From positions 62,001 to 126,000 of the IMG/VR virus record IMGVR_UViG_3300043399_000272: 64,000 bases of DNA; one strand, written 5' to 3'. Shown piece by piece: positions 10,195-38,515 of this stretch. Numbering within the stretch: position 1 is the stretch's first letter; each line of letters begins with the position of its first letter. The notes beneath the pieces were generated by a model, which was not told the DNA's origin, made no database searches, and was given only the letters and a program-made list of their open reading frames with translations. The position numbers were made by a program, and so were the translations under genes.

Positions 10195-11400
10195 TTAAAA
10201 TTGATCTTCTTCAGTTGAATGTTTATTAGCAACTGTAGACTTTGCTCCAACTGCTTCACTAATTAGGTCGAAATATCCAACACCTACTTCACGTTGATGT
10301 TTGACTGTGGTAAAGCCACGGTCTTGTGCAGCAAACTCTCGTTGTTGCATTTCACTGTAACCTGCCATGCCTCTTGCCTTGTAAGCCTCTGCTAGTTCGA
10401 ATGTAGCTAAGTTTACACTATGAAAGCCTGCAAGTGTAATGAATTGGAACTTATAACCCAATTCTCCTAGTTCTCTTTGGAATGTTTCACATTCGTCTTC
10501 ACTCAAAAACTTACGCCAATTAAAACTAGGACTGCAATTATAGGCAAGCATTTGGTCAGGATACTGTGCATGGATGGCGTCAGCGAACTTTCTAGCTTGT
10601 GCGATATCAGGCGTTGAAGTTTCGAACCATAAGAGATCAGCGTAAGGGGCATAAGCAAGACCTCTGCTAATACAAGCATCAATACCGTTTTTAAATTTGT
10701 AAAAACCTTCTTCAGTTCTTTCATTGATTACAAAGTCCTTGTCTAATGGGTCGTGGTCACTAGTAATAAGTGTAGCTGCTTCGGCATCTGTTCGTGCCAT
10801 AATAACAGTATCAACACCTGCAACATCTGCTGCTAGTCGTGCAGCATTCAATGTACGAATCATTTGGCTTGTGGGTACTAGAACTTTACCACCCAAGTGA
10901 CCACATTTCTTTTCACTAGCTAATTGGTCTTCAAAGTGTACACCAGCGGCGCCTGCTTCAATCATTGCTGCCATTAGCTCATATGCATTCAATGCACCAC
11001 CGAACCCAGCTTCTGCATCTGCAACGATAGGCAAGAAATAGTCTGTTTCAACTTTGCCTTCGCTGTGTTCAATTTGGTCTGCACGACGGAAAGCGTTGTT
11101 AATACCTTTAACAACACGAGGTACAGAATCAACAGGATAGAGTGATTGATCCGGGTATGTTTGATTTGAGGTATTGTTTGCACCGGCAACTTGCCATCCT
11201 GACAAGTAAATTGCTTTTAAGCCAGCTTTAGCATGTTGTACTGCCATTTGTCCATTATATGCACCTAGTGTATTGATGTATGGTTCTGTTGCTAGCAATT
11301 CACGTAGTTTTGTCGCTCCGCGTTTCGCTAGTGTGTGTTCAATCTGTACGCTACCTTGTAGCTTTTTAACTGTGTCTTGTGTGTAGTTTCTCTTTTTCAT
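10195..11400 (-). CDS. aceA: isocitrate lyase
   Basis: [25 protein letters not shown], catalytic [27 protein letters not shown]. Confidence 0.97.
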
Positions 11401-15037: not shown

Positions 15038-15682
15038 TCAATCAATGTGTTTAGAAATGTCTTGTTTGATTTTGTCAATTTCCAAATACAAATCTTTGAT
15101 AGCTTCGACTAAAAATGCTGTGATGGCTGCGTAGTTAACGGTTTTCTTTTCGCCATCAGTAACTGCATTTGGCATTACTTTTTCAACTTCTTGAGCAATA
15201 ACACCGTAACTACTACCGGAACCATCTGTCCAATCGAAACTATATCCCGATATTTGTTCTAAGATTTGTCTTACTTTTTCTAACTTGACTAAGTTTGTTT
15301 TAAAGTTTCCGTCAGACAATGAGTTAAAGTCAGTAGCTGCTAGGGCGCCTGTACTTGGATTAAAATACAGTTTAGAACTTGATACGTTTGCTGAGGAAAT
15401 TGTACCTGAAGTTGCAGTAGTTAACGTTGGGTAATAGTTAGCATTAGTAGAGGTGTCATCTGTGATTGAAGTACCAGCTGACACGGTTGACCAACTCAGA
15501 ACCCCTGATCCGTTCGTAGTTAGAACTTGCCCGTTACTTCCTCCGGTGATAGTTACGTTACTGGCAGAACCAAAAATTACATTACCTGTGTTTGCAACTA
15601 CGTTACTTGTAACAGTAACTTTATTAAATGTGAAGTCGCTTGTTTCATCGACTATGTATGGTTTAATTTTTACTAATGCCAT
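15038..15682 (-). CDS. short fibre protein with C-terminal intramolecular chaperone (peptidase S74-like)
   Basis: SDGNFKTN...GYSFDW...GVIAQEVEKVMP...VNY...LVEAIKDL; one ITGGxxGQVLxTxGxGxLSW module. Confidence 0.85.
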   Translation of the reverse strand: MALVKIKPYIVDETSDFTFNKVTVTSNVVANTGNVIFGSASNVTITGGSNGQVLTTNGSGVLSWSTVSAGTSITDDTSTNANYYPTLTTATSGTISSANVSSSKLYFNPSTGALAATDFNSLSDGNFKTNLVKLEKVRQILEQISGYSFDWTDGSGSSYGVIAQEVEKVMPNAVTDGEKKTVNYAAITAFLVEAIKDLYLEIDKIKQDISKHID

Positions 15683-15702
15683 ATTTTTTACCTTTTATTA
15701 TG

Positions 15703-15710
15703 TATTTATT
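15703..15710 (-). promoter_or_regulatory. late promoter-like motif (AATAAATA)
   Basis: About 20 nt upstream of the 15682 start. Confidence 0.5.
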
Positions 15711-17481
15711 ATCCTGGATATCCACCCGCTGCTGCACGGAATCCTTTATCTGCGGTAGACCCTCTTACCGCCATTGTAGTAGTATCTGATGAGTATGTAA
15801 TACGATCTATAACTGTACCAGCAGATGGCCCCCAAACAACCCCTCCCATGAACCACCCGTAATCGATACTACCGGTTGCTCCTATGTATCGTCTACCGCG
15901 AGATATTGGACCACGTGTTGCAGCAGTTCCTGTGTCAGATGCGAAAGTAATTCTATCAACATAAGTCCATACTGTCGGGTATTGACCAAGTCCACCAGCA
16001 AACCATCCATAGTTACTATTTCCAGCAGCACCTATACCGTATCTAGCTGATGATAATGGGCCCCTAGCACTGGCAGTAGTATTATCATTAGCATAGTCAA
16101 CACGGCTGACTCTTGATAACTTGTTCGGGTTAGCACCGCCGCCCCACCATCCGAAGTCACTGTTTCCAGTTGCGGCAACAAAGTATGTAGAGGCTGCTAG
16201 AGGACCTCTAGTCTCACTTGTGTTTAAATCACTAGCATAGGTTATCCTAGTTACAACTGAAACACCAGTAGAAGTTCCGCCGCCGCCACCAAAGTAACCA
16301 TAATTTTGATTACCAGTTGCATATCCTTGATATCTTCCGAACGATAACGGGCCTCGATCTGTAGCGGCAGCATTGTCATTAGAGTAATCTAATCTACATA
16401 TTAATGTCGTATTACTACCGTTTCCAAACCAACCATAACTGCTATTACCGGTAGCCGACATGTATTGGGTGTTGATTGTAGATCCACGTAATGTTGTTGC
16501 AACGTTGTCATTGCTATAATCAATGCGGTCTGATTGAGAAGTAGATGGGCTACTAGTACCTGATGCAAACCAACCATAATTAGCATCAACTGGCAAGGCA
16601 GCTACTGCCCAATTCAATGTTATATTTGCTGTTTTGCTAGTGTTAGTTGCGGTAGCAGTAATTAAACTAGAACTATTACCTGCAGTAGTAAATGTACCAA
16701 ATATATTAGCGGTACCTACACTTAACCCTGCCGGTAGTACATTTGCACTGTATGTTACTGGACTTCCTATTGCACTACTAGCACTTAGTGATACCGAAAA
16801 TACATCATTTACAACATTGCTATAACTTGCACCATTAGCAGGTGTACTCCAAGTAACTACGTCTGGGTTAACTGTAACGCTAAACGATCTACGTGTATCT
16901 TGTAGTTCTGTATCAATTGCATCTACCCCAAATGTGTATGTAGTAGAACTTGATACTGATCCCGCTGTACCTGTAATTGCACCCGTAGAAGAATTTAATG
17001 AACCACCTGACACTAATGTCCCTGTACCAACACTATATGTAATAGTACTATCACTTGTTGCAGACAGAGTATAATTCAATGTTTGTGTTTCGTATAACGT
17101 ACCTAAGCTGCCTGCAGCAGTATTCCAAGTAGGAGTACCACTATATTGCATTCCAGGAATATATATACCAGTACCACCGTCAGAATTAATTACATACAAA
17201 TTATATGATCCGGAAGCTTTTGCAGGACTTATGAACGTGATTGTATTAGAATCTACTACTGAGACAACTCCTATAGTAGAACCGTCAACAGTAACTATTG
17301 CACCAGTTTGAAATCCAGAACCATTAATTGTAATAGTTTGGCCTCCTGCAGTTGACGCTGCGGTATCATCACCTGGATAAGTAATCGAGTTAATTTTTGG
17401 TGATGCAATAGCATCTAACGTAGGTGCTAGAACTTCAGTAAGTGCTTGATTTTGTAATGTAGAGTATGATTGTGTAGTCAT
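15709..17481 (-). CDS. virion protein with IPT/TIG and Ig-like domains plus a C-terminal six-repeat propeller
   Basis: GGQTITINGSGF...ITFISPA (IPT); LPAGLSV (Ig-like); six xGNxxYGWFxGG...DRIxYxxD...RGPL repeats; ATG 17481 overlaps the upstream stop (TAATG). Confidence 0.75.
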   Translation of the reverse strand: MTTQSYSTLQNQALTEVLAPTLDAIASPKINSITYPGDDTAASTAGGQTITINGSGFQTGAIVTVDGSTIGVVSVVDSNTITFISPAKASGSYNLYVINSDGGTGIYIPGMQYSGTPTWNTAAGSLGTLYETQTLNYTLSATSDSTITYSVGTGTLVSGGSLNSSTGAITGTAGSVSSSTTYTFGVDAIDTELQDTRRSFSVTVNPDVVTWSTPANGASYSNVVNDVFSVSLSASSAIGSPVTYSANVLPAGLSVGTANIFGTFTTAGNSSSLITATATNTSKTANITLNWAVAALPVDANYGWFASGTSSPSTSQSDRIDYSNDNVATTLRGSTINTQYMSATGNSSYGWFGNGSNTTLICRLDYSNDNAAATDRGPLSFGRYQGYATGNQNYGYFGGGGGTSTGVSVVTRITYASDLNTSETRGPLAASTYFVAATGNSDFGWWGGGANPNKLSRVSRVDYANDNTTASARGPLSSARYGIGAAGNSNYGWFAGGLGQYPTVWTYVDRITFASDTGTAATRGPISRGRRYIGATGSIDYGWFMGGVVWGPSAGTVIDRITYSSDTTTMAVRGSTADKGFRAAAGGYPG

Positions 17482-19301
17482 TATAGTCCAATTGCCTTCC
17501 ATCCATACGTTACGTTACTGTATATCAACTCTACTGTAGCATTGTCATAATCTACTAGCAAATCTGAAGCAGCTCCTTGAATATTATGCCCATTTCGTAA
17601 TACAGTAATATTATTAGCTGCCGCAGTTCCTGCAAGATCACTTACTTTAACAGTGTCACCTAATGTAGCAACACTAGGTAATGTCACAGAAAGTGCGCCT
17701 GCTGATGTATCAACAAAATATCCATTAAACACTGTCATAGTGACGTTTGAATTAGTCAAGTTCCATGTCAATCCTGTAGGGGGATTAATATTACCAACTG
17801 ATGCAAAACTAGTAACTTCAATAGGTGCTTGATTTGGTGGTGCAGAAGAAAATGTTAATGTATTGCCAGATAATGAATATGTAGTCTTAGGTTGTAATGT
17901 TCCAGCTACACCAACGATTGTATAATTTTCAGAACTAGGTGTTACTGATAAAGTAAAGTTAACGGTAGTACCGTCACCGGTAAATGAATCGACTGCAAGT
18001 TGTGTTGGACCACCGCCTCCTTGTGCCCATGATAAGTTACCTGCACCGTCAGTACTTAATACATAATTAGCTGTTCCACCTGGGATATGTAAGTTAGCTA
18101 TATTGCCTAAACTAACGTTGCTTGCACCAGTAAAGTCTATAGTTCCAGTTGCGGTTAAACCAGTTCCACTAACCACAACAACGTTGGCATTTCCTGCAGC
18201 CTGGAATGTGATGTTACCGTTTTCGATAACATTCATTATGCTATTACCGTTAGTAACGTTTGACACACTAGTAATAATACCAGTTAGTTGGCTACCATTA
18301 CCTTTGAAGTAATCAGCACGAATGTTACCGTAACTAGTAAAAGTTACAACTTCAGAATTAATTGATACTACATCACCGAAACCAAATTCAGCATTACTTA
18401 CATCCCAACCCATAAAAGCCACACGAGCTTGTGTGTCATAATAGTTAAGTGCAGTACCTACATCTTTACCTGAGTTACTTGTAGGAGCAGCAGCGTTTGG
18501 TCCTGTTTGTAATTGAATAATCGGGTCTTCAACTGATAAATCTGAAACATTTACGTAAACCAAATTACCATCTACTGTTAAGTCTCCGCCGACAACTAAG
18601 TTTCCTGAAACACCTAAACTTGTTAAAGTACCAACACTAGTAATATTAGGTTGTGCTGCTGTAGTGACTGTCCCTGCTGTACCGGCAGATGTTGCATTAG
18701 CTACAGTTCCAGTTACATTAGAACCGTTGATCCCAGTCAATGCTTGACCGTTACCGATGATATTTCCTACTTGCACATTACCAGTTGTGGTAATTGTATT
18801 AGATCCAAAACTTGCTAAGAAGGTTGCTACGTTACTGTTATTATATGTTACAGGGGCAGATGCAAATGCACCATTGCCATATAATATGTTACTTGCATTA
18901 CCATCTAAGTTAACAGTAGCAATATTTCCTATTCCACTTACATTTCCAACTGCTACTGAGTTGGCAGTTGTTGCGTATGCTACTGCACCTGTTACGTTAC
19001 CGCCGGGTATACTAGTTAAACCTGCTCCTGAACCATTGAATGTGTTAGCTGTTACGTTACCAGTAACTGACAAAGCGTTAGTAGTATTGTTGAACGTTAA
19101 TGCATTACTACCATCAAGTGACCCATTGTTACTATAATAAATTGCAGTATTAGCGACATTAGGTATAGTTGGGAAAACCGTTACATTTCCGTCAGATTGT
19201 TTTACTACTAGGTCATCGTTAGTATTTAAAAATATAGTACCTTTACCACTACCTGGGGTGGGTACTGCATTTGCGTTTTCCTGTTTTAAAATTAATGACA
19301 T
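17481..19301 (-). CDS. fibre-like virion protein
   Basis: G/N/T/S-rich; one QPNITSVGTL module; FTGDGTTVNFTL domain; C-terminal YFVDTSAG..VTLP...NITV..NG domain. Confidence 0.75.
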   Translation of the reverse strand: MSLILKQENANAVPTPGSGKGTIFLNTNDDLVVKQSDGNVTVFPTIPNVANTAIYYSNNGSLDGSNALTFNNTTNALSVTGNVTANTFNGSGAGLTSIPGGNVTGAVAYATTANSVAVGNVSGIGNIATVNLDGNASNILYGNGAFASAPVTYNNSNVATFLASFGSNTITTTGNVQVGNIIGNGQALTGINGSNVTGTVANATSAGTAGTVTTAAQPNITSVGTLTSLGVSGNLVVGGDLTVDGNLVYVNVSDLSVEDPIIQLQTGPNAAAPTSNSGKDVGTALNYYDTQARVAFMGWDVSNAEFGFGDVVSINSEVVTFTSYGNIRADYFKGNGSQLTGIITSVSNVTNGNSIMNVIENGNITFQAAGNANVVVVSGTGLTATGTIDFTGASNVSLGNIANLHIPGGTANYVLSTDGAGNLSWAQGGGGPTQLAVDSFTGDGTTVNFTLSVTPSSENYTIVGVAGTLQPKTTYSLSGNTLTFSSAPPNQAPIEVTSFASVGNINPPTGLTWNLTNSNVTMTVFNGYFVDTSAGALSVTLPSVATLGDTVKVSDLAGTAAANNITVLRNGHNIQGAASDLLVDYDNATVELIYSNVTYGWKAIGL

Positions 19302-19313
19302 TATTTTTCCTCG

Positions 19314-19928
19314 TTATACTTCTACTAAGATACCTTCAATTTCTAATGTTCCGTCTCCTATATCGATAGGTAAACTGAAAAGACCTTGTCTGTTTGCAGG
19401 AATCAAGTAATGCTCTGACGTATTTATTTGAAACGGCATGTACGCAGCAGTGATTATAGTAGATGATCCTTGTTCGACCCAAGATAAGTTTCCGGCTCCG
19501 TCTGTTGCTAAAACATAACCGTCAATACCACCAGATATGTGTAAATTTTCAACAGCACCTAAATTAGCACTAGATGTAGCTACAAAATTATTTGCGGTAA
19601 GAGTAGTTGTAGTTTTGTCGAAGGTTAGCCCAGCATTTCCGGCAAAAGATCCGCCGTCATTGAATTGAACTTGAGTGTTTGATCCACCAGGTGATCCTGA
19701 ACCGCCTGACTGCGGAACCCAAGACAATGAACCTGATCCGTTAGTGCTAAGTACGTAGTTAGCAGAACCACCGGTTATAGTAACATTTGATACTGAACCA
19801 AGATTTGCAGAACCTGTGACTTGTATATTACCCGAATATGTATTGGCCGTAATACTACTATTACTAGCATTCAATATAATATTACCGGTCGTTAAGCCGT
19901 TCTTAACGTTAAAATATTTTTGTGTCAC
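19314..19928 (-). CDS. short fibre-like virion protein
   Basis: GTG start; KYFNVKxG N-terminus; two TxGxGxLSW modules. Confidence 0.7.
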   Translation of the reverse strand: MTQKYFNVKNGLTTGNIILNASNSSITANTYSGNIQVTGSANLGSVSNVTITGGSANYVLSTNGSGSLSWVPQSGGSGSPGGSNTQVQFNDGGSFAGNAGLTFDKTTTTLTANNFVATSSANLGAVENLHISGGIDGYVLATDGAGNLSWVEQGSSTIITAAYMPFQINTSEHYLIPANRQGLFSLPIDIGDGTLEIEGILVEV

Positions 19929-19981
19929 AGTTCCATATTCCCTGTTGTAAGCAAATTGTAATGTAGAAACCTATATTGCTA

Positions 19982-22981
19982 TTAGATAGCAATGTAAGTA
20001 GCTACTAGTTTAACCTTTGTGTTAGCTCCTGATGCAGTTGCATACAATGCAACGTTTCCTGATACTCCGCTAACATTACTAGAAATTTCAATAATATCAG
20101 CAGTATTATTACTACAGATACTACCGTAAATTGTTACGTATGAATTAACTCCGTCATGTATTAGCAATGTTTCAACAGATTGGTATCCGTCATCACCTTC
20201 AGCACTGATAACATATTTAGCAGTTCTAAAACTAGCGGGAGCAAATTGGTCGATAACAGTGTTAGTTGTTACAGCTACGTTAGCTCTTCCTGAAGTAAAC
20301 GCAGTATTTGCTGCGGAATAGTTAGCCGCTAAATTACCAGAAACATTTAGACTTGTTAGTGTACCTACACTAGTAATATTTGGTTGTGCAGCAGTTGTTA
20401 CTGTACCTGCAGTAGTTGCCGTATTAGCAGTGCCCCATAGATTACCGATGAAGTAATTAGCTGTTGCAGCATTGCCCAAATCAGCATTAGATGCAGTAAT
20501 ATTACCAGTTACTCCTAAGTAGCCAGTTACGTTTGATCCAGTAGCAGTAACAACCATTGTTGTATTACCACCCGCAACAAGATTTACGTTACCATTAGAT
20601 ACTGGGATACTTACATTACTTGTGCCGTTAGATATAGAACTAGAGCTGAGTGTCGCCCACGATAACGTTCCGGTACCATCTGTTTGTAGATATTGACCTG
20701 AAGTACCACCAGTAATACGAACATTACCGACTGGTCCTAAACTTACGTTGCTTGCACCTGTTAGATTTACAGTACCGGTGCTTGTTAAACCAGTTAATGT
20801 ACCAACTGATGTAATATTAGGTTGTGCTGCTGTAGTTACTGTACCCGCAGTAGTTGCTGTGTTAGCAGTACCCCAGAAGTTACCGATGAAGTAATTTGCA
20901 GTTGCTGCATTACCTAAGTTTGCATTATTTGTTACAATATTACCGTTTAGTGTGACAATGTTAGTAGTATCATCAAACGTAAAGTCAGAACTTGCACCAG
21001 CATTACCAGAATTGTTAAACAGTATAGATGTATTTGTACCGGGTACAACAATGTTACCACTGATGTTACCTTGTACGTTACCGATGAAGTACGGTGCAGT
21101 AATGTTACCAGTAGATGTTAATGTACCGTTTGCTCCGCCTACTGTGATAGTGACGTTAGCAGTTGAATTACCGACAACCAATGAAGATAGAGTACCAACA
21201 CTAGTAATATTTGGTTGTGCTGCTGTTGTTAATGTACCAGTTAATAAACTTGCACCGATAGTACCTGAGTTAGCATATACATTACCTGCTGTTACGTTAG
21301 CAGTAACAGATAAACTCGATAGAGTACCAACACTAGTAATATTTGGTTGTGCCGCTGTTGTTAATGTACCAGTTAATAAACTTGCACCGATAGTACCTGA
21401 GTTAGCATAGATATTTGCAGCAGTCACGTTGCCCGTAAATACACCAATATTTGCGCCAATATTACCTACGTTTGCATTACCTGTAATATTTAATGTACCT
21501 GTACCAGTGATGCTTCCTGATTTGAACGGAGCATATGTAGCGTTAGCCCAGTCAATTACCGTAGTTGGCTCTGTAGCAACGCCGTCAAATAGTTTCCAAA
21601 CACCATCTGTGTGGTCACGAACAATACCAGTATGCTCATATGTACCATCGTTATAGCTTGCAACGATACCTAAATCTACGATATTTGCAGTATTATTAGC
21701 ACCAATATAAATTAATGGGTCACCGACTACTAAGTCAGTAACGTTTTGATAATTCAAGTTTCCAGTAACTGTTAAATTGCCTGTAATACCGACATTACCT
21801 GTAAAAGATGCGCCGCCAGCAGCAACAGTCATGCCATTAGAAATATATGCTGAACCATTAGATGATAAATTACCTACTGTTGCATTACCAGTAACACCTA
21901 AACTTGCTAGATCTCCGACACTAGTAATATTAGGTTGTGCTGCTGTTGTTAACGTACCTGTTACGAAATTCGCACTTACTAAATTAGCACCACTCAACTG
22001 AGAGCCTGAGCCACTCATTGTGATGTCACCGTCTGCTACTAAAGTCAAACTTGATAGTGTACCAACACTAGTAATATTTGGTTGTGCCGCTGTTGTTAAT
22101 GTACCAGTTAATAAACTTGCACCAATTGTACCACTATTAGCGTAAACATTACCTGATGTTACGTTACCAGTAACTGATAGTGATGATAATGTACCAACAC
22201 TAGTAATATTTGGTTGAGCCGCAGTTGTTAATGTACCAGTTACAAAGTTTGCGCTTACTAAATTTCCGCCTGATAAAGTTCCTGCACCTTCCATTGTAAC
22301 GTTCTTAACGCCCAATGTATCAGTTGTTTTATCGTATGTAAAGTTTGCATCAGCACCAAATGAACCACCGTCATTAAACTGAACTTGTGTGTTTGAACCT
22401 GCAGTACCTAAACTATTAGGAGAAGCCCAACTTAGAGTACCGGATCCATTTGTACTTAGGACATATCCTGATGTACCACCTGTAATGTGTACATTGCCTA
22501 CAGCACCTAATGCAACATTGCTTGTGCCAGTGAAGTCTACTATTCCAGTGCTGGTTAATCCAGTTAAAGTACCTAAACTAGTAATATTTGGTTGAGCAGC
22601 AGTGACAACATTTCCTGCATATGCAGCATAGTTTGCATTAGCAGTAGTGCCCGTAATATTAGCACCGTTAATACTAGATAATAATGAACCATTACCGCTG
22701 AAGAAATTCGCTGTTACTAAGTTACCTAAGTTAGCGTTTCCTGCAGTTAAATTACCTGTTACGTCTACACTAGATAGTGTACCGACACTGGTAATATTGG
22801 GTTGTGAAGAAGTTGTTAATGTACCAGTAACAAAGTTTGCGGTTGCTAAATTACCTAAGTTAGCAACTCCGCCGGCTTTAACACTAATATTACCTACATT
22901 AGCAATGTTGCCTGAGGCCGCATCTAAAGTAATATTTCCTGTTACAATACCTTGCTTAACGTTAAAATATTTTGTTGTCAT
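19982..22981 (-). CDS. long fibre-like virion protein (999 aa)
   Basis: Nine QPNITSxGxL modules; C-terminal FRTAKY...LLIHDG domain. Confidence 0.8.
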   Translation of the reverse strand: MTTKYFNVKQGIVTGNITLDAASGNIANVGNISVKAGGVANLGNLATANFVTGTLTTSSQPNITSVGTLSSVDVTGNLTAGNANLGNLVTANFFSGNGSLLSSINGANITGTTANANYAAYAGNVVTAAQPNITSLGTLTGLTSTGIVDFTGTSNVALGAVGNVHITGGTSGYVLSTNGSGTLSWASPNSLGTAGSNTQVQFNDGGSFGADANFTYDKTTDTLGVKNVTMEGAGTLSGGNLVSANFVTGTLTTAAQPNITSVGTLSSLSVTGNVTSGNVYANSGTIGASLLTGTLTTAAQPNITSVGTLSSLTLVADGDITMSGSGSQLSGANLVSANFVTGTLTTAAQPNITSVGDLASLGVTGNATVGNLSSNGSAYISNGMTVAAGGASFTGNVGITGNLTVTGNLNYQNVTDLVVGDPLIYIGANNTANIVDLGIVASYNDGTYEHTGIVRDHTDGVWKLFDGVATEPTTVIDWANATYAPFKSGSITGTGTLNITGNANVGNIGANIGVFTGNVTAANIYANSGTIGASLLTGTLTTAAQPNITSVGTLSSLSVTANVTAGNVYANSGTIGASLLTGTLTTAAQPNITSVGTLSSLVVGNSTANVTITVGGANGTLTSTGNITAPYFIGNVQGNISGNIVVPGTNTSILFNNSGNAGASSDFTFDDTTNIVTLNGNIVTNNANLGNAATANYFIGNFWGTANTATTAGTVTTAAQPNITSVGTLTGLTSTGTVNLTGASNVSLGPVGNVRITGGTSGQYLQTDGTGTLSWATLSSSSISNGTSNVSIPVSNGNVNLVAGGNTTMVVTATGSNVTGYLGVTGNITASNADLGNAATANYFIGNLWGTANTATTAGTVTTAAQPNITSVGTLTSLNVSGNLAANYSAANTAFTSGRANVAVTTNTVIDQFAPASFRTAKYVISAEGDDGYQSVETLLIHDGVNSYVTIYGSICSNNTADIIEISSNVSGVSGNVALYATASGANTKVKLVATYIAI
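21186..21409. repeat. near-perfect coding direct repeat (92 nt, period 132 nt; third partial copy at 22053-22123)
   Basis: 21186-21277 vs 21318-21409 match at 91/92 positions; 22053-22123 matches 70/71. Confidence 0.9.
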
Positions 22982-22992
22982 TTTTTATTTCC

Positions 22993-25590
22993 TTATCCTG
23001 TCACATATGTACCAAGTAAATTGATTGTTGTATTCGTTGATGTGGTTGTTGCCAACAATCTTACATTCCCAGAAGTAATATCAGTACTCAAATACACTAT
23101 ATCAGATCCTATAGTTGATAAACTACCATATACAGTAACGTAGCTAGCTGATCCATCGTGTATCAACAAGACTTCAATTGCTTGATAACCGTCATCACTG
23201 TTTGCCCTTATAGTGTATTTAGCTGATCTGTACTTATTTATCGGGAATGAGTCTATTACGGTGCTAGTAGTTACTACCACCGGTGTTCTATTGCTATAAA
23301 AGTCATTAACTTTTAAGTTAGTTATTGTCGCAGTCCCTGAACTAGTTAAGTTGCCAACCGTTGTATTCCCTCGTAAAGTAATATCACCTGTAGTACTTCC
23401 TACAGTCACGTTAGCTGACAATCCGATGTTTACGTTTCCTATAACTGATGTAAAAATACCAGCATCAGTTCCGGTAACTGCAATTAAACCTGAACCCAAA
23501 TTCAAACTGCCTGTAGTTACATTAGCTCCGGTACTAGTAACTACCAATATATTTGCGTTTCCACCAGCACTCAAATTCACATTACCGTTAGCTACTGGAA
23601 TAGATACGTTACTTGTACCGTTTGCTACAGCACTTGTATTAATTGTTTCCCAAGATAAATTACCTGATCCATCTGTTTGTAAATATTGGCCTGCTGCGCC
23701 GCCTGAGATGTGTACATTACCAACTGCGCCTAATGTTACATTAGATGCTGTAGACAAGTTTAATGTACCTGTGCTAGTAATATTAGTTACGCTTAGTACG
23801 TTTGTCGTATCATTAAATGTAAATGCAGCAGAACCTACATAATATGATCCATTGCTGTATGGTATTTGTGAGCTGGTTATAGCAGGTATTACACCATAAA
23901 CAGTTACTTCAATAATAGATCCACTTAGCGGGGCAGTACTAAAGGTAATTTGGTTACTAGATACTGAGTATGTATTAGAAAACTGAGTAATACCATTTAT
24001 GTTTACTGAAACAGCGTCAAGCCCCGAAGGTGTTGTAGTTAATGTAAATGTTGTCTGAGAGCCGTTACCAGTTAATGTATTCTTTACAATATTAACAAAT
24101 CCGCCTGAAGTTCCACCTGCGGGACCCCAAGATAAGTTGCCTGTACCATCGGTAATCAACGCATACCCAGAAGAGCCTCCTGTAATGTGAACGTTACCGA
24201 CAGGACCTAATGCAACATTACTACTACTAGTAAAGTTAACTACTCCGGTACTAGTAACTCCAGAGAGTGTACCAACACTTGTAATGTTAGGTTGTGCGTT
24301 TGTGTATACAGTACCAGCTACCAATGCATTTGATACTTGTCCAGTTACATTGGCTCCATTTAAGCCAGTTAATGCTTGACCATTACCAATGATATTACCA
24401 ACAGTTACATTACCAGTCGTAGTTATTGTGTTTGATCCAAATGATGCTAATAACGAAGTAACATTACTGTTGCTATAATCCGTAACGTCTGCTGCCCAAC
24501 TTAAATTACCTGCACCATCTGTTTTAAGTACATAACCTGCAGAACCACCAGTAATACGAACATTACCGATTGGTCCTAAACTTACGTTGCTTGCATTAGT
24601 TAAGTTAACAGTACCGGTACTAGTAAGACTTGATAAAGTGCCTACACTAGTAATATTAGGTTGAGATGCAGTAGTTAAAGTACCGCTTACAAAATTAGCA
24701 GAAGCTAAGTTACCTAAATTAGCATTTCCAGAAGTAATGTTTCCACTTACATTTAGGTTTGATAATGTACCAACTGATGTGATATTTGGTTGCGCTGCTG
24801 TATAGACAGTCCCGGCTACTAATGCATTTGATACTTGCCCAGTAACGTTAGAACCATTTAGTCCAGTTAATGATTGACCATTACCAATGATATTACCCGC
24901 AGTAATATTACCAGTAGTTGTTATGGTATTAGATCCAAAAGATGCTAGAAGTGAAGTGACGTTAGCGTTACTATAGTCAGTAGTATCTGCTGACCAACTA
25001 AGATTACCTAATCCATCTGTTTTAAGAACTTGTCCTGCGCTGCCACCAGTAATACGAACATTACCGACAGGACCTAAACTTACATTGCTTGCGCCAGTTA
25101 AATTGATTACCCCGGTGCTTGTTAAACCAGTAAGTGTGCCAACTGATGTGATATTTGGTTGCGCTGCTGTATAGACAGTACCTGCAATCAATGCGTTAGC
25201 TACTTGACCGGCTACGTTAGCACCGGTTATGTAGGTAATGCCAGCACCGTTAGCAGTTACGTTGTCAACTGTTAATGTTTTAGAACTATCATTGTATGTT
25301 AAATTTGCACTAGCAGCAAATGATCCACTACCATTATATTGAATCTGTGTATTAGATCCTGCTGGTGAGGCTGTGTCAGTAGCCCAACTTAAATTACCTG
25401 CACCATCAGTTTTTAATACTTGGCCCGATGAGCCACCGGTAATTTTAACATTAGCATTACTACCTAGTTGGCTAGTACCAGTAACAGATAGGTTATTAGC
25501 ATTAACGTTGGCAACATTGTCGATGACTTCAAAAACTACATCGCCACCGACAGAGAACCCAGCCACTGCGTTAAATTTTTTAATTGCCAT
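22993..25590 (-). CDS. long fibre-like virion protein (865 aa)
   Basis: Four QPNITSVGTL modules, five TDGxGNLSW modules, a large internal duplication, C-terminal YRSAKY...LLIHDG domain. Confidence 0.8.
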   Translation of the reverse strand: MAIKKFNAVAGFSVGGDVVFEVIDNVANVNANNLSVTGTSQLGSNANVKITGGSSGQVLKTDGAGNLSWATDTASPAGSNTQIQYNGSGSFAASANLTYNDSSKTLTVDNVTANGAGITYITGANVAGQVANALIAGTVYTAAQPNITSVGTLTGLTSTGVINLTGASNVSLGPVGNVRITGGSAGQVLKTDGLGNLSWSADTTDYSNANVTSLLASFGSNTITTTGNITAGNIIGNGQSLTGLNGSNVTGQVSNALVAGTVYTAAQPNITSVGTLSNLNVSGNITSGNANLGNLASANFVSGTLTTASQPNITSVGTLSSLTSTGTVNLTNASNVSLGPIGNVRITGGSAGYVLKTDGAGNLSWAADVTDYSNSNVTSLLASFGSNTITTTGNVTVGNIIGNGQALTGLNGANVTGQVSNALVAGTVYTNAQPNITSVGTLSGVTSTGVVNFTSSSNVALGPVGNVHITGGSSGYALITDGTGNLSWGPAGGTSGGFVNIVKNTLTGNGSQTTFTLTTTPSGLDAVSVNINGITQFSNTYSVSSNQITFSTAPLSGSIIEVTVYGVIPAITSSQIPYSNGSYYVGSAAFTFNDTTNVLSVTNITSTGTLNLSTASNVTLGAVGNVHISGGAAGQYLQTDGSGNLSWETINTSAVANGTSNVSIPVANGNVNLSAGGNANILVVTSTGANVTTGSLNLGSGLIAVTGTDAGIFTSVIGNVNIGLSANVTVGSTTGDITLRGNTTVGNLTSSGTATITNLKVNDFYSNRTPVVVTTSTVIDSFPINKYRSAKYTIRANSDDGYQAIEVLLIHDGSASYVTVYGSLSTIGSDIVYLSTDITSGNVRLLATTTSTNTTINLLGTYVTG

Positions 25591-25614
25591 AATATATCCT
25601 GTGTTACGGTCTTA

Positions 25615-27795
25615 TTATATTGTTCTATATTGTGTGGTCCAAACAGTTGACGCACTTGTTGCAGGGGTGACTCCTAGTAAAATTTGATTTAATGATATAT
25701 TCACTGCTAATGTTCCAGTTGCTCCACCTAATAATACAGTGCCAGAAACAGAGTAATCTACATTACCAGATCCGTCGTGTACGCAATATACTGTTGCTAC
25801 ACTATATTTTCCGCCAGTTTGATTTTCACCTTTGACATCGAATATAACACCTCTAACACCGGTAGTAGAAACTGCTGCAATAGTTTGATTAGCACCAATA
25901 CTTGAAGTTGTGATAGTTTCGCTGCGTACAGTTGAATTTCCAATCAACAAATTAGCAACAGTAGTGTTGCCTGCTGTTAGTGTATTAGAAATATTTGCGC
26001 TGCCAGTGATTATGACTTGTGGGTTAGCACTTACACCATCTACATTAAGTATATTTGCAACACCATTGCTGCTGACAGTAACGTTTCCGTTTTGATAAAC
26101 AGATATATTGCTATTTCCATTAGCAAGACTACTTGTACTTACTGTAGTCCAAGTTAATGTTCCTGAACCATTTGTTTGTAATACTTGTCCAGCACTACCG
26201 TCGGTTACTGGATAAGACAATCCACTTGCAATCAGAGAATTTAAGTTAGCGGTATTGTTAACTCTTAAATTACCACCAATTGTCAAATTACTCAAAGTAC
26301 CGACTGAGGTAATATTAGGCTGACTTGCTTGTAAAACTGTGCCGTTTAAGTTACCTAAGAATGCTTCACCTCTTATGTTACCGTATGCACTGGCAGTAAC
26401 TACTTCATTAGTGATTGAGCCAACTTGAGAAATTGCCTGGAATTCGTTAGAACCGGTTTTCCAAATGAACGCTTCGTTAATCGGTCCGCTTCCGTTAGCA
26501 TAGTAGTTATGAAGAATCATACCACGGTCTTTACCGTCATATGCTGTTGCATTTGCTCCGTTACCAGAACCACCCATACTAATTAAAGGGTCAGAAATAT
26601 CTAAGTTAGTTACGTTAATATATGTTGTATTTCCACTAACTGTTAGATTTCCTGCAATAGTTGCGTTACCTTGAAACGCTGCATCACCGCGTGAAGTAAA
26701 TGTACCAGTTGATAAATTATTAGCTATATTAGCAGCATCCATCAAAATTACATTAGCACTAGATTTAATGTAAGCTGTTCCAAGGTTAATGTTAGAAACG
26801 TATAAATCTTTCCACTGATTGCTTGAGCTACCTAAATCAAAGTTATTGTTAATACTAGGAATCATTGAGGAAATAACTCTAGCAGTGACATTCAAGTTTG
26901 CGGCGTTAACATTACCACTTACGTTAGCATTTCCAGTAACGTTTAAGCTAGATAATGTACCGATACTAGTAATATTAGGTTGAGCACCAGTAGTTAATGT
27001 ACCACTTACAAAGTTAGCAGATGCTAAGTTACCTAAATTAGCATTTCCAGAAGTAATATTTCCTAAAACGCTTAGTGAACCCAATGTGCCAACTTGTGTT
27101 ATGTTGGGTTGCAATGCAGTAGTTAACGTACCTGAAACATAATTAGCACTTACTACGTTGGCCCCAGAGATACTACCTGCACCGTCTACTACCAAGTTAG
27201 TAAGTGTGCCTACGCTGGTGATGTTAGGTTGCGCTGCTGTTGTTAACGTACCGCTTACAAAATTAGCAGAAGCTAAGTTACCTAAATTAGCATTTCCAGT
27301 AGTAAGGTTACCAACTAGTGCAAGTGAGTTAGCTGAGGCGTTGAACGTTAACCCAGAAGAAACAGTTAATATACCGTTGTTATTGTATGTAACGCCGTTA
27401 GCAGTACCTGATAGTACAGTATTGGCATATATGTTTCCATAGATATTACCATCAATGCGGTTAGCAGTAACATTAGCAGCACTTAATGTGTCTGATATAT
27501 TTGCATTTCCAGTTACTGTTAATAAATTTGTAGATGGGGTGAATTGGAAATTAGCACTAGCACCAAAAGAGCCATCATTATTATATTGAACATAATTATT
27601 TGAACCTGCGGGTAATTGAAAGTCCCACGGCGATCCATTAGCATAAAGTAAGTTATTGGTTAATACGTTACCTGCAGCTACGTTACCAGTAAATGTTGCA
27701 TTTGCGGTAGTAATATCACCGTTAGCCAATATAATCGTGGTTGGGTTTTCTCCTACTGAAAAGCCACCGACTGAGTTAAAGGTTCTAATTGCCAT
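25615..27795 (-). CDS. long fibre-like virion protein (726 aa)
   Basis: FNSVGGFSVG N-terminus; four QPNIT modules; related C-terminal VHDG domain. Confidence 0.8.
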   Translation of the reverse strand: MAIRTFNSVGGFSVGENPTTIILANGDITTANATFTGNVAAGNVLTNNLLYANGSPWDFQLPAGSNNYVQYNNDGSFGASANFQFTPSTNLLTVTGNANISDTLSAANVTANRIDGNIYGNIYANTVLSGTANGVTYNNNGILTVSSGLTFNASANSLALVGNLTTGNANLGNLASANFVSGTLTTAAQPNITSVGTLTNLVVDGAGSISGANVVSANYVSGTLTTALQPNITQVGTLGSLSVLGNITSGNANLGNLASANFVSGTLTTGAQPNITSIGTLSSLNVTGNANVSGNVNAANLNVTARVISSMIPSINNNFDLGSSSNQWKDLYVSNINLGTAYIKSSANVILMDAANIANNLSTGTFTSRGDAAFQGNATIAGNLTVSGNTTYINVTNLDISDPLISMGGSGNGANATAYDGKDRGMILHNYYANGSGPINEAFIWKTGSNEFQAISQVGSITNEVVTASAYGNIRGEAFLGNLNGTVLQASQPNITSVGTLSNLTIGGNLRVNNTANLNSLIASGLSYPVTDGSAGQVLQTNGSGTLTWTTVSTSSLANGNSNISVYQNGNVTVSSNGVANILNVDGVSANPQVIITGSANISNTLTAGNTTVANLLIGNSTVRSETITTSSIGANQTIAAVSTTGVRGVIFDVKGENQTGGKYSVATVYCVHDGSGNVDYSVSGTVLLGGATGTLAVNISLNQILLGVTPATSASTVWTTQYRTI

Positions 27796-27807
27796 TTTTT
27801 ATTTTCC

Positions 27808-28497
27808 TTATTCTTTGTAAGTTGTTATACTCATTTTATATTCAGTTAGATTACTAGTGAGTGGTGTTACTGTTAACTGTAAATTACCTGAATTGTACGA
27901 GAAAGTAAAATCTGCTACACCAGGACTTGAATTGGGTACATCAATGGTACCGTACTCACTGTAGTCAACTTGGTTGTCTAAAATTCCTGCAAACAGCTTA
28001 CTAATCTGTCTATAATTTAATGTGTTATCCGTCGCAATGATCGTAACATCAACTGAAGATATTCCTTCTATAGGAGTAGCATATAATACTTGATTTGATG
28101 CTGTGCTTGCTGTAGTTGCAAATATCACATTAGTACTAGAAAATTCAGATGTGCCTGATCCCAATGCATACGTATTTGCAATAACTTTGTCGGTTACTTG
28201 CAACACACCGGAATTAAAATCAAACTTTAATTTTTCACTAGCATCAGCAAGTCCATTATTGTTAAACAATACCCAAGTATTTTGTCCAGGTACTACAATA
28301 TTTGCTTCAACGTTTCCTTGAAAGGTACCTAAAAACAATTCAGCAGATATAGTACCAGAAGATACTGTATTTCCAGTAATACTTACATTACCTAGTTCTG
28401 CATAACTTGTATAAATGTTGCCGTTGTTATCCGCAAATGGGCGCGGAGGTATACCTATTGTGTACCCGCTTTTACTGTTAAATGGATCTGCAGCCAT
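27808..28497 (-). CDS. short virion protein, first gene of the fibre array
   Basis: FNSKSGYTIG N-terminus; divergent copy of the shared C-terminal domain. Confidence 0.7.
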   Translation of the reverse strand: MAADPFNSKSGYTIGIPPRPFADNNGNIYTSYAELGNVSITGNTVSSGTISAELFLGTFQGNVEANIVVPGQNTWVLFNNNGLADASEKLKFDFNSGVLQVTDKVIANTYALGSGTSEFSSTNVIFATTASTASNQVLYATPIEGISSVDVTIIATDNTLNYRQISKLFAGILDNQVDYSEYGTIDVPNSSPGVADFTFSYNSGNLQLTVTPLTSNLTEYKMSITTYKE

Positions 28498-28525: not shown

Positions 28526-28533
28526 TATTTATC
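28526..28533 (-). promoter_or_regulatory. late promoter-like motif (GATAAATA) for the fibre array
   Basis: Lies between the capsid terminator and the 28497 start. Confidence 0.6.
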
Positions 28534-28562: not shown

Positions 28563-28586
28563 AAAAAAGCACACCGAAGTGTGCTT
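28563..28586 (-). terminator. intrinsic terminator after the major capsid gene
   Basis: AAGCACAC-TTCG-GTGTGCTT followed by a T run on the - strand (cUUCGg tetraloop). Confidence 0.9.
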
Positions 28587-37390: not shown

Positions 37391-37414
37391 TTAAATAATT
37401 CTAATGTATTTATG
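37391..37414. promoter_or_regulatory. pair of opposed late promoter-like motifs
   Basis: TTAAATA at 37391-37397 (+) and CATAAATA at 37407-37414 (-), between divergent genes. Confidence 0.55.
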
Positions 37415-38464: not shown

Positions 38465-38488
38465 AAAGTACAACTCGTTTTTTTGGTC

Positions 38489-38496: not shown

Positions 38497-38515
38497 CACG
38501 AATATTGGAGATATC

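What the first reader, a model, noticed from the sequence alone, without database searches (positions are those of the whole stretch)
15038..28497. Eight-gene, 13.5-kb fibre array assembled from a small shared module library
Seen: 18 QPNIT(S)xGxL modules across four genes (1, 9, 4 and 4 copies), 12 GGxxGxxLxTxGxGxLSW-type modules across six genes, and recurrent xNTQVQFNxxGSF modules, in different orders and numbers per gene. Inference: a combinatorial fibre system in which length and tip composition vary by module shuffling.
Basis: partly seen in the sequence, partly recalled or inferred. Interest (0 to 1): 0.6.

Follow-up and report, generated by a model that had tools for sequence, protein, structure and literature searches.

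The report
Modular fibre-gene array in freshwater jumbo phage
Right after its capsid gene, an uncultured freshwater jumbo phage carries a row of fibre genes built from about ten reusable sequence modules; relatives keep the fibre ends but change fibre length by adding or losing whole modules, a clear but not unprecedented case of how phage host-recognition fibres evolve.

Summary
Eight co-oriented minus-strand ORFs fill 15038-28497. They hold exactly 18 QPNIT modules (1/9/4/4) and 12 GxGxL[S/T]W modules in six genes, against about 0.002 and 0.01 expected from composition.

The window lies in a 260-kb IMG/VR record of a T4-like jumbo myovirus from freshwater. Its capsid protein is 65-69% identical to those of Vibrio phage 2.275.O, PA5oct and PBECO4. 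The array starts 120 bp after the capsid gene.

I defined eleven modules: N, Q, W, FN, D, E, F, G, T, X and S74.
- Four genes share both ends: an N-terminal anchor and a C-terminal T beta-sandwich.
- One gene ends in a TSP4-XD1/gp9-like domain, and one in an S74 chaperone.
- One gene, 15709-17502, has no shared module. It is an Ig/repeat adhesin-like protein, always paired with the XD1-ended fibre.

In all 79 related loci with enough upstream sequence, the array follows the capsid gene. Gene 1 keeps a fixed architecture and gene 2 nearly so. Gene 3 ranges from 378 to over 2,600 aa. Near-identical relatives differ by whole-module insertions or deletions. T tips group by gene position, so shafts vary and tips do not.

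A homotrimer of gene 1 is supported (0.87 against control 0.00). Virion location, most likely the tail, is inferred. Verdict: a new variant of a known kind, of moderate interest.

The parts
27808..28497 (-). Gene 1 (229 aa), architecture N-FN-T. It is the minimal member and a conserved core gene of the clade.
   Evidence: Module HMMs. 118 homologues of 127-264 aa (nearly all full-length ones 225-246 aa), down to 43% identity. Same architecture in about 80 loci. AF2 pLDDT 89.5. Homotrimer ipSAE 0.87 against best control 0.00.
25615..27795 (-). Gene 2 (726 aa), architecture N-FN-FN-Q-Q-Q-E-Q-W-F-T.
   Evidence: Across orthologues the N terminus is 84% identical, E 70%, the Q region 27-40% with gaps, and T 45-60%.
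22993..25590 (-). Gene 3 (865 aa), architecture N-W-FN-Q-W-D-Q-Q-W-D-Q-W-G-FN-W-F-T. This is the most variable position among relatives.
   Evidence: A 498-nt Q-W-D supermodule is duplicated at 79% DNA identity (family D10).
19982..22981 (-). Gene 4 (999 aa), architecture N-Q-Q-W-FN-Q-Q-Q-E-Q-Q-FN-Q-W-F-Q-T.
   Evidence: It has one extra 49-aa Q module relative to the L019 orthologue.
19314..19928 (-). Gene 5 (204 aa, GTG start), architecture N-W-FN-W plus a unique 50-aa C terminus.
   Evidence: The N terminus aligns with those of genes 1-4. The L019 orthologue is N-W-FN-W-G.
17481..19301 (-). Gene 6 (606 aa), architecture FN-D-Q-E-F-W-G-X. It has a different N terminus from genes 1-5 and a C-terminal XD1-like domain.
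   Evidence: Domain-wise tblastn hits to tail-fibre or structural proteins of Pelagibacter phage Mosig (X, 46% identity) and of cyanophages (E).
17484..17768 (-). X domain (aa 512-606 of gene 6), homologous to XD1 of CBA120 TSP4-N (T4 gp9 middle-domain fold).
   Evidence: phmmer against 7rej/7rfo/7rfv, residues 93-173, E 6.5e-9. Domain identity taken from PMC8825819.
15709..17502 (-). Gene 7 (597 aa). It has no shared module: TIG plus He_PIG Ig-like domains, then six repeats of about 47 aa with a [Y/F]GW[F/W] motif (probably a propeller). It overlaps the end of gene 6.
   Evidence: Pfam PF01833 and PF05345. phrog_19111. Repeats. Conserved adjacency to G-X-ended fibres in L105-L110 and L020. 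Atlas leads to TIG/He_PIG proteins with Kelch, RCC1 or Laminin_G C termini.
15038..15682 (-). Gene 8 (214 aa): one W module plus a Peptidase_S74 intramolecular chaperone.
   Evidence: PF13884, 50.9 bits against a cut-off of 22. 18 tail-fibre or baseplate PHROGs among 25 family hits. SDGNFK motif at aa 123.
15041..15325 (-). S74 chaperone domain of gene 8 (aa 120-214).
27811..28110 (-). T domain of gene 1. T domains also lie at 25618-25905, 22999-23277 and 19985-20275. It is a C-terminal beta-sandwich.
   Evidence: VIA-align Z 11.2 to the Fri1 tailspike gp49 C-terminal domain and Z 10.9 to 9f4a_LA. The same top hits appear for the gene 2 T domain. Foldseek hit to T4 gp9, E 1e-4. T domains cluster by gene position.
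28567..28586 (-). Terminator-like hairpin between the capsid gene and gene 1.
   Evidence: 8-bp stem, 4-nt loop, T run. Consensus match only.
28526..28533 (-). GATAAATA, a late-promoter-like motif 36 nt upstream of the gene 1 start. A similar AATAAATA lies 28 nt upstream of gene 8.
   Evidence: The same [G/A]ATAAATA spacing occurs before two other virion-protein genes (34597-37380 and 45084-46133). Suggestive only.
28618..29814 (-). Gp23-type major capsid protein gene, immediately upstream. It is context and the anchor for synteny.
   Evidence: phrog_138, E 5e-100. 65-69% identity to jumbo-phage capsid proteins. Found upstream of the array in 79 of 79 loci.

Best explanation
The locus encodes the variable fibre set of an uncultured freshwater T4-like jumbo myovirus. 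Most likely these fibres are baseplate- or tail-attached and recognise the host.

Composition. Seven genes encode all-beta, homotrimeric fibre proteins. They are built from short recurrent modules (N, Q, W, FN, D, E, F, G) and closed by one of a few end domains:
- T, a gp9/tailspike-type C-terminal beta-sandwich;
- X, a TSP4-XD1/gp9-middle-like domain;
- an S74 auto-chaperone.

Attachment. Genes 1-5 share the N module, the best-conserved part. I take it to be a common plug into one kind of virion socket.

A two-part fibre. Gene 6 ends in X and is translationally coupled to gene 7. Gene 7's conserved Ig-like N-terminal half would sit on X, and its exchangeable C-terminal repeat domain would act as the adhesin.

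Diversification. Shaft length changes by gain, loss and exchange of whole modules, through recombination between the 60-88% identical in-frame DNA repeats. This happens both within a gene (tandem duplication) and between paralogues. The ends stay fixed.

Shown: module content, trimer prediction, synteny, module indels among relatives, and position-specific T types.
Inferred: virion location, the anchor role of N, X-Ig docking, receptor binding, and the recombination mechanism.
For: - Module counts and maps.
- DNA-level repeats with in-frame spacings of 132, 147 and 498 nt.
- 8 of 18 Q modules have their closest copy in another gene; the rest are intragenic copies.
- Phage identity and head/baseplate context.
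- The array follows the capsid gene in 79 of 79 loci. Capsid proteins there are 83-100% identical, while 77 of the 80 gene 1 relatives are only 41-56% identical to the window's.
- Architectures across about 80 loci.
- Whole-module indels between near-identical relatives.
- The N terminus is the most conserved part and the Q region the least.
- T domains cluster by position.
- Homotrimer: score 0.87, best of 3 controls 0.00, runs agree in at least 95% of contacts, partner pLDDT at least 89. The mark was reached by 20 of 30 proteins solved as pairs and 1 of 23 solved as single chains. The calibration is only rough here, because I used my own alignment and three copies.
- Tail affinity of the parts: S74; tail-fibre PHROGs; X matches TSP4-N XD1; the T fold matches tailspike C-terminal domains, a Klebsiella phage baseplate chain and T4 gp9; BFVD best hits are cyanophage tail-fibre-like or virion proteins; the E, X and G/W parts hit annotated tail fibres of cultured cyanophages, pelagiphages and a roseophage; some metagenomic homologues carry the T7 tail-fibre N-terminal domain PF03906.
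- The X-ended fibre and the Ig gene are adjacent and overlapping in seven loci, although both have otherwise different sequences.
Against: - There is no virion proteomics, microscopy or expression data, because the phage is uncultured. No RNA run holds the array.
- The position directly after the capsid gene, in the head-gene orientation, would equally suit head fibres.
- The XD1 domain is described as a spacer, not a docking domain, in CBA120 TSP4. The X-Ig docking therefore rests on gene adjacency alone.
- T is well conserved, which is unusual for a receptor-binding tip.
- The cultured relatives PA5oct and Vibrio phage 2.275.O lack this array, so nothing can be transferred from their proteomes.
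- Read-level evidence for ongoing module rearrangement was uninterpretable.
Confidence: 0.7

Rival explanations
1. Head fibres or capsid decoration. The N...T proteins are trimeric fibres of graded length anchored on the capsid, by analogy with T4 Hoc, phi29 head fibres or Dec-type trimers. On this reading their position in the head-gene block reflects function. Gene 1 would be a short, conserved decoration trimer.
For: The array begins 120 bp after the capsid gene, on the same strand as portal, protease, scaffold and capsid genes. This holds in 79 of 79 loci. Gene 1 has a near-constant length and a conserved T domain, like a structural lattice component. A terminator-like hairpin plus its own late-like motif could set lower stoichiometry.
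Against: Every recognisable part points to tails: S74, the XD1-like domain, the tailspike-type T fold, tail-fibre PHROGs, and homologues with the T7 tail-fibre N domain. In the cultured relatives the same post-capsid slot holds tail-collar or short-tail-fibre genes, or an S74 tail fibre found in the virion proteome. A second FN-T protein in the genome has a gp9/10-type baseplate N terminus.
Confidence: 0.15
2. End-to-end or branched network. T is a socket of the same fold type as the T4 gp9 C-terminal domain, and N is its plug. The paralogues would dock onto one another and onto a gp9-like 259-aa protein, forming concatenated or branched fibres rather than independent ones.
For: Five proteins carry N and five carry T, counting the ORF at G000 175821-176600 with a gp9/10_N-like start, an FN module and a T domain. 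Foldseek's top PDB hit for gene 1 is T4 gp9, the tail-fibre connector. The Atlas gives leads to PF07880 clusters. N and T are the conserved ends. Related jumbo phages are known to build branched fibre complexes (abstracts of PMC9700779 and PMC10253068).
Against: The best T matches are distal C-terminal domains of tailspikes that carry nothing further. The PF07880 hits are below the cut-off, and the Atlas scores are below 0.9.
Confidence: 0.12
3. Artefact or non-virion proteins. The repeats would be a misassembly of several strains, or the proteins would be non-structural.
For: This is a short-read metagenome assembly of a repeat-rich region. Logan contigs break at Q repeats.
Against: Exact repeats are at most 69 bp. 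An identical 23-kb sequence exists in a second record. Zero-difference contig pieces tile the genes. Long intact ORFs with the same architectures recur in about 80 independent contigs.
Confidence: 0.03

Closest known systems
Branched tailspike complex of Ackermannviridae (CBA120 TSP1-4) and the T4 gp9/gp10 XD domains
   Same: Several receptor-binding trimers are encoded side by side. Gene 6 carries a domain homologous to TSP4 XD1, which has the T4 gp9 middle-domain fold (E 6.5e-9).
   Different: Only XD1 was matched, and it lies at the C-terminal end rather than near the N terminus. No XD2/XD3 docking jellyrolls were matched, and Pfam found no depolymerase domain. The proteins are repeat-module fibres rather than beta-helix tailspikes.
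Hyperbranched or multi-fibre adsorption apparatus of related jumbo phages (RaK2/phiK64-1, PMC10253068; phiKp24, PMC9700779)
   Same: The broad phage group is probably the same: the window's capsid protein is 65-69% identical to those of PA5oct and PBECO4, and a PA5oct abstract places RaK2 and K64-1 with these. Both have many fibre genes.
   Different: Those fibres are described in connection with capsule depolymerases or capsulated hosts (abstracts). Here Pfam found no enzymatic domain. The module library is different, the position directly after the capsid gene is fixed, and the cultured relatives examined lack the gene 1 family and the modules.
T4 long tail fibre (gp34-gp37) with its gp9 socket, and the mosaic evolution of T-even fibres by recombination at repeated motifs (from my own knowledge)
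   Same: Trimeric beta-structured fibres with internal repeats. Serial genes. The X region hits a 'tail fiber proximal subunit' PHROG (phrog_972). The T fold resembles gp9. Diversification occurs by recombination between repeats (inferred).
   Different: No sequence membership in the gp34-37 families. The paralogues share both ends. No gp38- or gp57-type chaperone was noted (no dedicated search); an S74 auto-chaperone occurs on one short member only.
'Tail fiber-like', 'structural' or 'virion' proteins of T4-like cyanophages and pelagiphages (S-SM2, S-TIM5, S-MbCM100, Pelagibacter phage Mosig)
   Same: The E, X and G/W parts match at sequence level. The FN-T part matches at fold level.
   Different: tblastn against 50,697 phage records gave no hit to the Q-rich gene 4, none to gene 5, and only an E-domain hit for gene 2 (BLAST's low-complexity filter may contribute). 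The ordered N...T paralogue series after the capsid gene was seen only in the uncultured clade.
Endosialidase-type C-terminal intramolecular chaperone (Peptidase_S74), as in K1F endosialidase and the T5 L-shaped fibre (from my own knowledge)
   Same: Gene 8 has a full-length PF13884 domain with the SDxxxK start.
   Different: After release of the chaperone the mature protein would be only about 120 aa, with one W module. It is a very short member.

Membership tests
Tail fibre or spike with a Peptidase_S74 intramolecular chaperone | PF13884 match above the gathering score at the C terminus | tested here: met
   Gene 8: 50.9 bits against a cut-off of 22, profile positions 1-58 of 58.
Tail fibre or spike with a Peptidase_S74 intramolecular chaperone | Conserved Ser...Lys self-cleavage motif at the start of the domain, and actual autoproteolysis | tested here: inconclusive
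   An SDGNFK motif lies at aa 123-128. That it matches the catalytic pair is from my memory of the family. Cleavage cannot be tested here.
T4 gp10/gp9-type XD adaptor domains (CBA120 TSP4-N) | Sequence homology to an XD domain | tested here: met
   Gene 6 aa 522-602 against 7rej residues 93-173 (XD1), E 6.5e-9.
T4 gp10/gp9-type XD adaptor domains (CBA120 TSP4-N) | XD2/XD3 jellyroll domains that bind partner trimers | tested here: not met
   Only XD1 aligned. No match to TSP4 residues beyond 173. The paper regards XD1 as a spacer.
T4 gp9 (baseplate tail-fibre connector), considered for gene 1 | PF07880 gp9/10 N-terminal domain | tested here: not met
   No Pfam hit in gene 1. Weak sub-threshold PF07880 hits occur only in two other ORFs of the genome.
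T4 gp9 (baseplate tail-fibre connector), considered for gene 1 | Trimer with a C-terminal beta-sandwich of the gp9 type | tested here: inconclusive
   Trimer supported. Foldseek hit to 1qex at E 1e-4 but TM only 0.39. Stronger matches are tailspike C-terminal domains, Z 10-11.
Depolymerase tailspike sets of RaK2/phiKp24-type jumbo phages | Enzymatic beta-helix or lyase domains in the fibre genes | tested here: not met
   Pfam scan of all eight proteins found none. No PDB sequence hit for gene 3.
PA5oct/PBECO4/Vibrio 2.275.O-type T4-like jumbo phages (identity of the phage) | Gp23-type capsid protein, portal-protease-scaffold-capsid synteny, T4-type baseplate genes | tested here: met
Hoc-like or head-fibre capsid decoration | Location on the capsid; Ig-like Hoc-type domains | not testable with these tools
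   Only positional evidence, adjacency to the capsid gene. The N...T proteins have no Ig-domain hits.
DGR-diversified receptor-binding protein (Mtd type) | Reverse transcriptase and template repeat in the genome | tested here: not met
   No PF00078 match in the 260-kb record, which is 74% complete. The template repeat was not searched.

The most novel reading that the evidence does not exclude
The conserved ends may be complementary connectors. The T domain, whose fold resembles the C-terminal domain of T4 gp9 (the tail-fibre connector), would be a socket. The N module would be its plug.

The paralogues would then assemble onto a gp9-like FN-T protein and onto each other. This would give concatenated or branched fibres whose length and composition are set combinatorially, by which paralogues and how many shaft modules a strain carries. 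The XD1-ended fibre plus the Ig adhesin would be one terminal branch.
Probability: 0.12. Interest if true: 0.75.

Novelty: new variant of a known kind. Interest (0 to 1): 0.45.

Why it matters
Host recognition is the least predictable part of uncultured phage genomes. This locus gives a clean natural experiment. In at least 218 IMG/VR loci of one freshwater or aquatic jumbo-phage clade, a nearly invariant capsid gene is followed by fibre genes whose ends are fixed and whose shafts change by whole modules.

Three things follow:
- It defines a repeat family (Q, W, FN and others). No Pfam model matches it above threshold (one weak DUF7770 hit), and the QPNIT motif appears in no phage paper in the library searched.
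- It shows that fibre length, not tip type, is the fast-evolving variable. This may suit hosts with surface layers of different thickness.
- It offers a conserved landmark (capsid gene plus gene 1) for pulling such loci out of metagenomes.

The principle of modular, recombining, multi-copy tail fibres is long established, so this is an extension rather than a surprise.

Tried and rejected
- **tblastn against cultured phages.** Genes 4 and 5 gave no match, and gene 2 only an E-domain hit. BLAST's low-complexity filter may be partly responsible, so I do not claim absence.
- **PDB sequence search.** Gene 3 and the 259-aa gp9-like ORF gave nothing.
- **All-against-all BLASTP with composition correction off.** This produced long spurious alignments, even to g15709, because of the T/G/S/N-rich composition. 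I replaced it with module HMMs.
- **T4 late promoter TATAAATA.** It occurs once in the window against 9.4 expected. Only a looser [G/A]ATAAATA motif fits.
- **Reads.** Only contigs were available. The 'joints' at 85% likeness come from other module-bearing genes in the same samples and cannot show within-population rearrangement. No RNA holder was found.
- **AF2 monomer of gene 2.** Confidence was low (mean pLDDT 62) through the Q region, as expected for an intertwined trimer. Only the FN, E and T parts are usable, and the E fold remains unidentified.
- **DGR explanation.** Rejected, because there is no reverse transcriptase.
- **Literature.** The 'moraphage' paper (PMC12619734) describes a different, non-T4-like lineage. 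No paper was found for PDB 9f4a.
- **Large protein-representative search.** Not used, because the word search and family scans sufficed.


Full report
**1. Observation**

Region 15038-28497 holds eight tightly packed minus-strand ORFs of 214, 597, 606, 204, 999, 865, 726 and 229 aa.
There are 18 QPNIT[S/Q]xGxL motifs, split 1/9/4/4. There are 12 GxGxL[S/T]W motifs in six genes.
- From the amino-acid composition of these proteins one expects 0.002 and 0.01 such motifs. The maximum in 2,000 shuffles was one of each.
- The repeats are also visible in DNA, as 16 direct-repeat families at 60-88% identity. Spacings are in frame: 132, 147, 369, 438 and 498 nt.
- Misassembly is unlikely. The longest exact repeat is 60-69 bp. 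A second IMG/VR record is 100% identical over 23,219 bp. Contigs from two freshwater metagenome runs tile most of the 5.6 kb that was laid without a single difference, although they break at Q repeats.

**2. The genome**

The window is bases 62001-126000 of a 260,148-bp IMG/VR virus record, estimated 74% complete. The runs that hold it are freshwater metagenomes.

Gene order on the minus strand upstream of the array is portal, head protease, a scaffold-like gene and a Gp23-type major capsid protein. Downstream lie nrdA and nrdB. T4-type baseplate hub, gp5-, gp25- and gp6-like genes lie at 37-56 kb.

The capsid protein is 65-69% identical to those of Vibrio phage 2.275.O, Pseudomonas phage PA5oct and Escherichia phage PBECO4. 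This is therefore a T4-core jumbo myovirus of that broad group. In the two cultured relatives I examined, the stretch after the capsid gene is different:
- small ORFs, tail-collar and short-tail-fibre genes in the Vibrio phage;
- a homing endonuclease and an S74-ended 'tail fiber protein H' found by virion mass spectrometry in PA5oct.

Neither has the gene 1 family or the modules.

**3. Anatomy**

I built profile HMMs for eleven recurrent segments from the window's proteins.

| Gene | Coordinates | Architecture |
|---|---|---|
| 1 | 27808-28497 | N-FN-T |
| 2 | 25615-27795 | N-FN-FN-Q-Q-Q-E-Q-W-F-T |
| 3 | 22993-25590 | N-W-FN-Q-W-D-Q-Q-W-D-Q-W-G-FN-W-F-T |
| 4 | 19982-22981 | N-Q-Q-W-FN-Q-Q-Q-E-Q-Q-FN-Q-W-F-Q-T |
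| 5 | 19314-19928 | N-W-FN-W plus a unique tail |
| 6 | 17481-19301 | FN-D-Q-E-F-W-G-X |
| 7 | 15709-17502 | no shared module |
| 8 | 15038-15682 | W-S74 |

Four fibres therefore share both the N-terminal 24-aa module and the roughly 100-aa C-terminal T domain, and differ only in the shaft.

Gene 7 is a different kind of protein. It has TIG and He_PIG Ig-like domains, followed by six repeats of about 47 aa with a [Y/F]GW[F/W] motif (phrog_19111).

Five more ORFs elsewhere in the genome carry modules. One is a 259-aa protein with FN and T and a weak gp9/10-type N terminus. Another is a 1,036-aa protein with the same kind of N terminus plus Q and FN modules.

**4. What the parts are**

- **S74.** Gene 8 has a full Peptidase_S74 chaperone domain and hits 18 tail-fibre or baseplate PHROGs among 25 family hits.
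- **X.** The X domain matches CBA120 TSP4-N residues 93-173 at E 6.5e-9. These residues are the XD1 domain, whose closest structural relative is the T4 gp9 middle domain (PMC8825819). That paper treats XD1 as a spacer rather than a docking surface.
- **Gene 1 model.** It is confident (pLDDT 89.5, all beta).
- **T.** The T domain of gene 1 aligns with the C-terminal domains of Acinetobacter phage tailspikes (Fri1 gp49 Z 11.2, phage vB_ApiP_P1 Z 9.9). It also aligns with a chain of a Klebsiella phage baseplate (9f4a_LA, Z 10.9) and with Kp9 gp42 (Z 8.3). The independently modelled T of gene 2 gives the same list.
- **gp9 link.** Foldseek's first PDB hit is T4 gp9 (E 1e-4). Its best viral hits are cyanophage 'tail fiber-like' or 'virion' proteins.
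- **Trimer.** A three-copy prediction of gene 1 passed: score 0.87, best of 3 controls 0.00. The runs agree in at least 95% of contacts and the partner pLDDT is at least 89. The mark was reached by 20 of 30 proteins solved as pairs and 1 of 23 solved as single chains. The calibration is only rough here, because I used my own alignment and three copies. The interface runs through residues 2-126 and the T domain, as in an intertwined fibre.
- **Cultured-phage matches.** The E, X and G/W parts of gene 6 hit annotated tail-fibre or structural proteins in 345 phage records. Most are cyanophages, and they also include Pelagibacter phage Mosig and Roseobacter phage CRP-2. The Salmonella, Dickeya and Escherichia records are probably Ackermannviridae (my inference).
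- **Metagenomic relatives.** Some homologues of gene 3 carry the T7 tail-fibre N-terminal domain or S74.

Every recognisable element therefore has a tail-fibre or baseplate affinity.

**5. Comparison with relatives**

A word search with gene 3 returned more than 6,500 significant proteins, so the module family is very large in metagenomes.

Gene 1 has 118 homologues. The full-length ones are nearly all 225-246 aa, and they are down to 43% identical. A scan of IMG/VR with the gene 1 alignment found 218 loci, of which 80 were fetched. Two longer contigs were added.

- **Synteny.** In 79 of 79 loci with enough upstream sequence, a capsid gene lies upstream on the same strand. In 48 of them the gap is 123-157 bp. 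Capsid proteins are 83-100% identical (median 91%), while 77 of the 80 gene 1 relatives are only 41-56% identical to the window's. This is a fast-evolving locus next to a slow one.
- **Architectures**. Gene 1 is N-FN-T in nearly every locus (N-T in a few). Gene 2 keeps N-FN-FN-Q(0-5)-E-Q-W-F-T at 611-1,068 aa. Gene 3 always starts N-W-FN but ranges from 378 aa (N-W-G-FN-T) to over 2,601 aa with about 20 Q modules. Gene 4 starts N-Q-Q and ends in T.
- **Recent changes.** L030 and L033 have identical gene 1 and 92% identical gene 3, yet their gene 3 products are 2,166 and 2,025 aa. The differences are insertions of 24-48 aa, one of them a complete Q module. Between the window and L019, gene 2 differs by two Q modules (40 and 43 aa) and gene 4 by one (49 aa).
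- **Within the window.** Eight of 18 Q modules have their nearest copy in another gene, at up to 81% DNA identity. The others are tandem intragenic copies.
- **Conservation along gene 2.** It is highest in N (84%) and E (70%). It is lowest, with gaps, in the Q region (27-40%).
- **T domains.** T domains from six genomes form position-specific clades: T1, T2 and a joint T3/4 clade. Shafts vary and tips do not.

**6. The gene 6 / gene 7 pair**

Relatives of gene 7 share only the N-terminal roughly 300 aa (48-59% identity). Their C-terminal parts differ, and the whole proteins range from 591 to 1,956 aa.

In L105-L110 and L020, the gene immediately upstream ends in G-X and overlaps or abuts the Ig gene. 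The upstream proteins otherwise have different N termini and lengths of 384-1,460 aa.

Atlas leads point to viral TIG/He_PIG proteins with Kelch, RCC1 or Laminin_G C termini. All scores are below 0.9, so these are leads only.

A conserved N-terminal half, a swappable C-terminal half and a fixed upstream partner are the usual signature of an adaptor plus receptor-binding protein. I infer that gene 7 sits on the X end of gene 6. This was not tested.

**7. Mechanism proposed**

The eight genes would be a late transcription unit. A terminator-like hairpin follows the capsid gene. A [G/A]ATAAATA motif lies about 30 nt before genes 1 and 8, and before two other virion-protein genes. This is suggestive only.

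The unit would encode trimeric virion fibres:
- N is a common anchor.
- The shaft is a string of small beta modules.
- T, X or S74 closes the trimer.

Length evolves by unequal recombination among in-frame repeats and by exchange between paralogues.

I put 0.7 on the whole picture. I am more confident in 'modular trimeric virion fibres' and less in 'tail-attached'.

A diversity-generating retroelement is excluded as far as the 260 kb go, because there is no reverse transcriptase.

**8. Rivals**

- **Head fibres, 0.15.** Supported only by position.
- **A plug-and-socket network, 0.12.** N would dock on the gp9-like T. It is suggested by the gp9 links but is untested.
- **Artefact, 0.03.**

**9. 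Novelty**

Multi-gene fibre sets in jumbo phages, branched receptor-binding complexes and mosaic repeat-driven fibre evolution are all known (and my own knowledge of T-even fibres).

Three things are new here:
- the module family itself: no Pfam model reaches threshold (only a weak DUF7770 hit in gene 5), and the motif 'QPNIT' appears in no phage paper of the library;
- the ordered series of paralogues that share both ends;
- the fixed position after the capsid gene in a large uncultured clade.

I rate it a new variant of a known kind, with interest 0.45.

**10. Constraints**

- No alternative genetic code was used.

Noticed in passing
window 55559-64000 (+), runs off the window: A giant ORF of over 2,814 aa lies directly after the gp6-like baseplate wedge gene. 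It carries none of the fibre modules. It may be a gp7-like giant wedge protein.
   Followed up: no
G000:C1 175821-176600 (+) and 230552-233662 (+), outside the window (loci L101, L103): A 259-aa ORF has a weak gp9/10_N-like start plus FN and T modules. A 1,036-aa ORF has the same type of start plus Q and FN modules. They are candidate gp9 and gp10 analogues built from the same module library.
   Followed up: partly
G000:C1 165123-166505 (-), 210225-211463 (+), 254646-257033 (+) (L100, L102, L104): Three more module-bearing ORFs are scattered in the genome. The 412-aa one has a sub-threshold Mtd_N hit.
   Followed up: partly
window 28567-28586 (-) and 28526-28533 (-): A strong terminator-like hairpin lies right after the capsid gene, followed by GATAAATA 36 nt before gene 1. 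A [G/A]ATAAATA motif also precedes 15038-15682, 34597-37380, 45084-46133 and 1136-1501. The canonical TATAAATA is depleted (1 against 9.4 expected).
   Followed up: partly
window 17481-17502: Gene 7's longest ORF overlaps the end of gene 6 by 22 nt. The Atlas record starts at Met8, which would give a 1-nt stop/start overlap. The same overlap recurs in L107, L109 and L110.
   Followed up: partly
window 37412-38464 and 38483-39334 (+): Two adjacent paralogous 'baseplate hub' genes (phrog_150).
   Followed up: no
window 10195-11400 (-): A 401-aa ORF with no PHROG match sits between nrdA and nrdB.
   Followed up: no
L019 22135 onward (NCBI GCA_013572995.1 contig): In this relative the array is followed by a tail-assembly-chaperone-like gene and a 3,433-aa protein with RCC1 and Laminin_G_3 repeats. 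The Atlas leads for the window's gene 7 point to Ig proteins with RCC1 or Laminin_G domains, so it may be a giant counterpart.
   Followed up: no
L042, L046, L048, L049, L057 and similar loci: In another sub-branch, gene 3 is short (378-515 aa). It is followed by a 174-203-aa protein with only the N module, then a fibre of about 1,320-1,400 aa that starts with E and lacks N. This may be a split fibre.
   Followed up: no
runs X1, X2 and X3, laid on window 19982-25590: 114-197 contigs per run were laid, and well over half of them are under 90% alike. They pile up on the Q, W and D modules. The same freshwater samples and a wastewater sample therefore hold many other genes with these modules.
   Followed up: no
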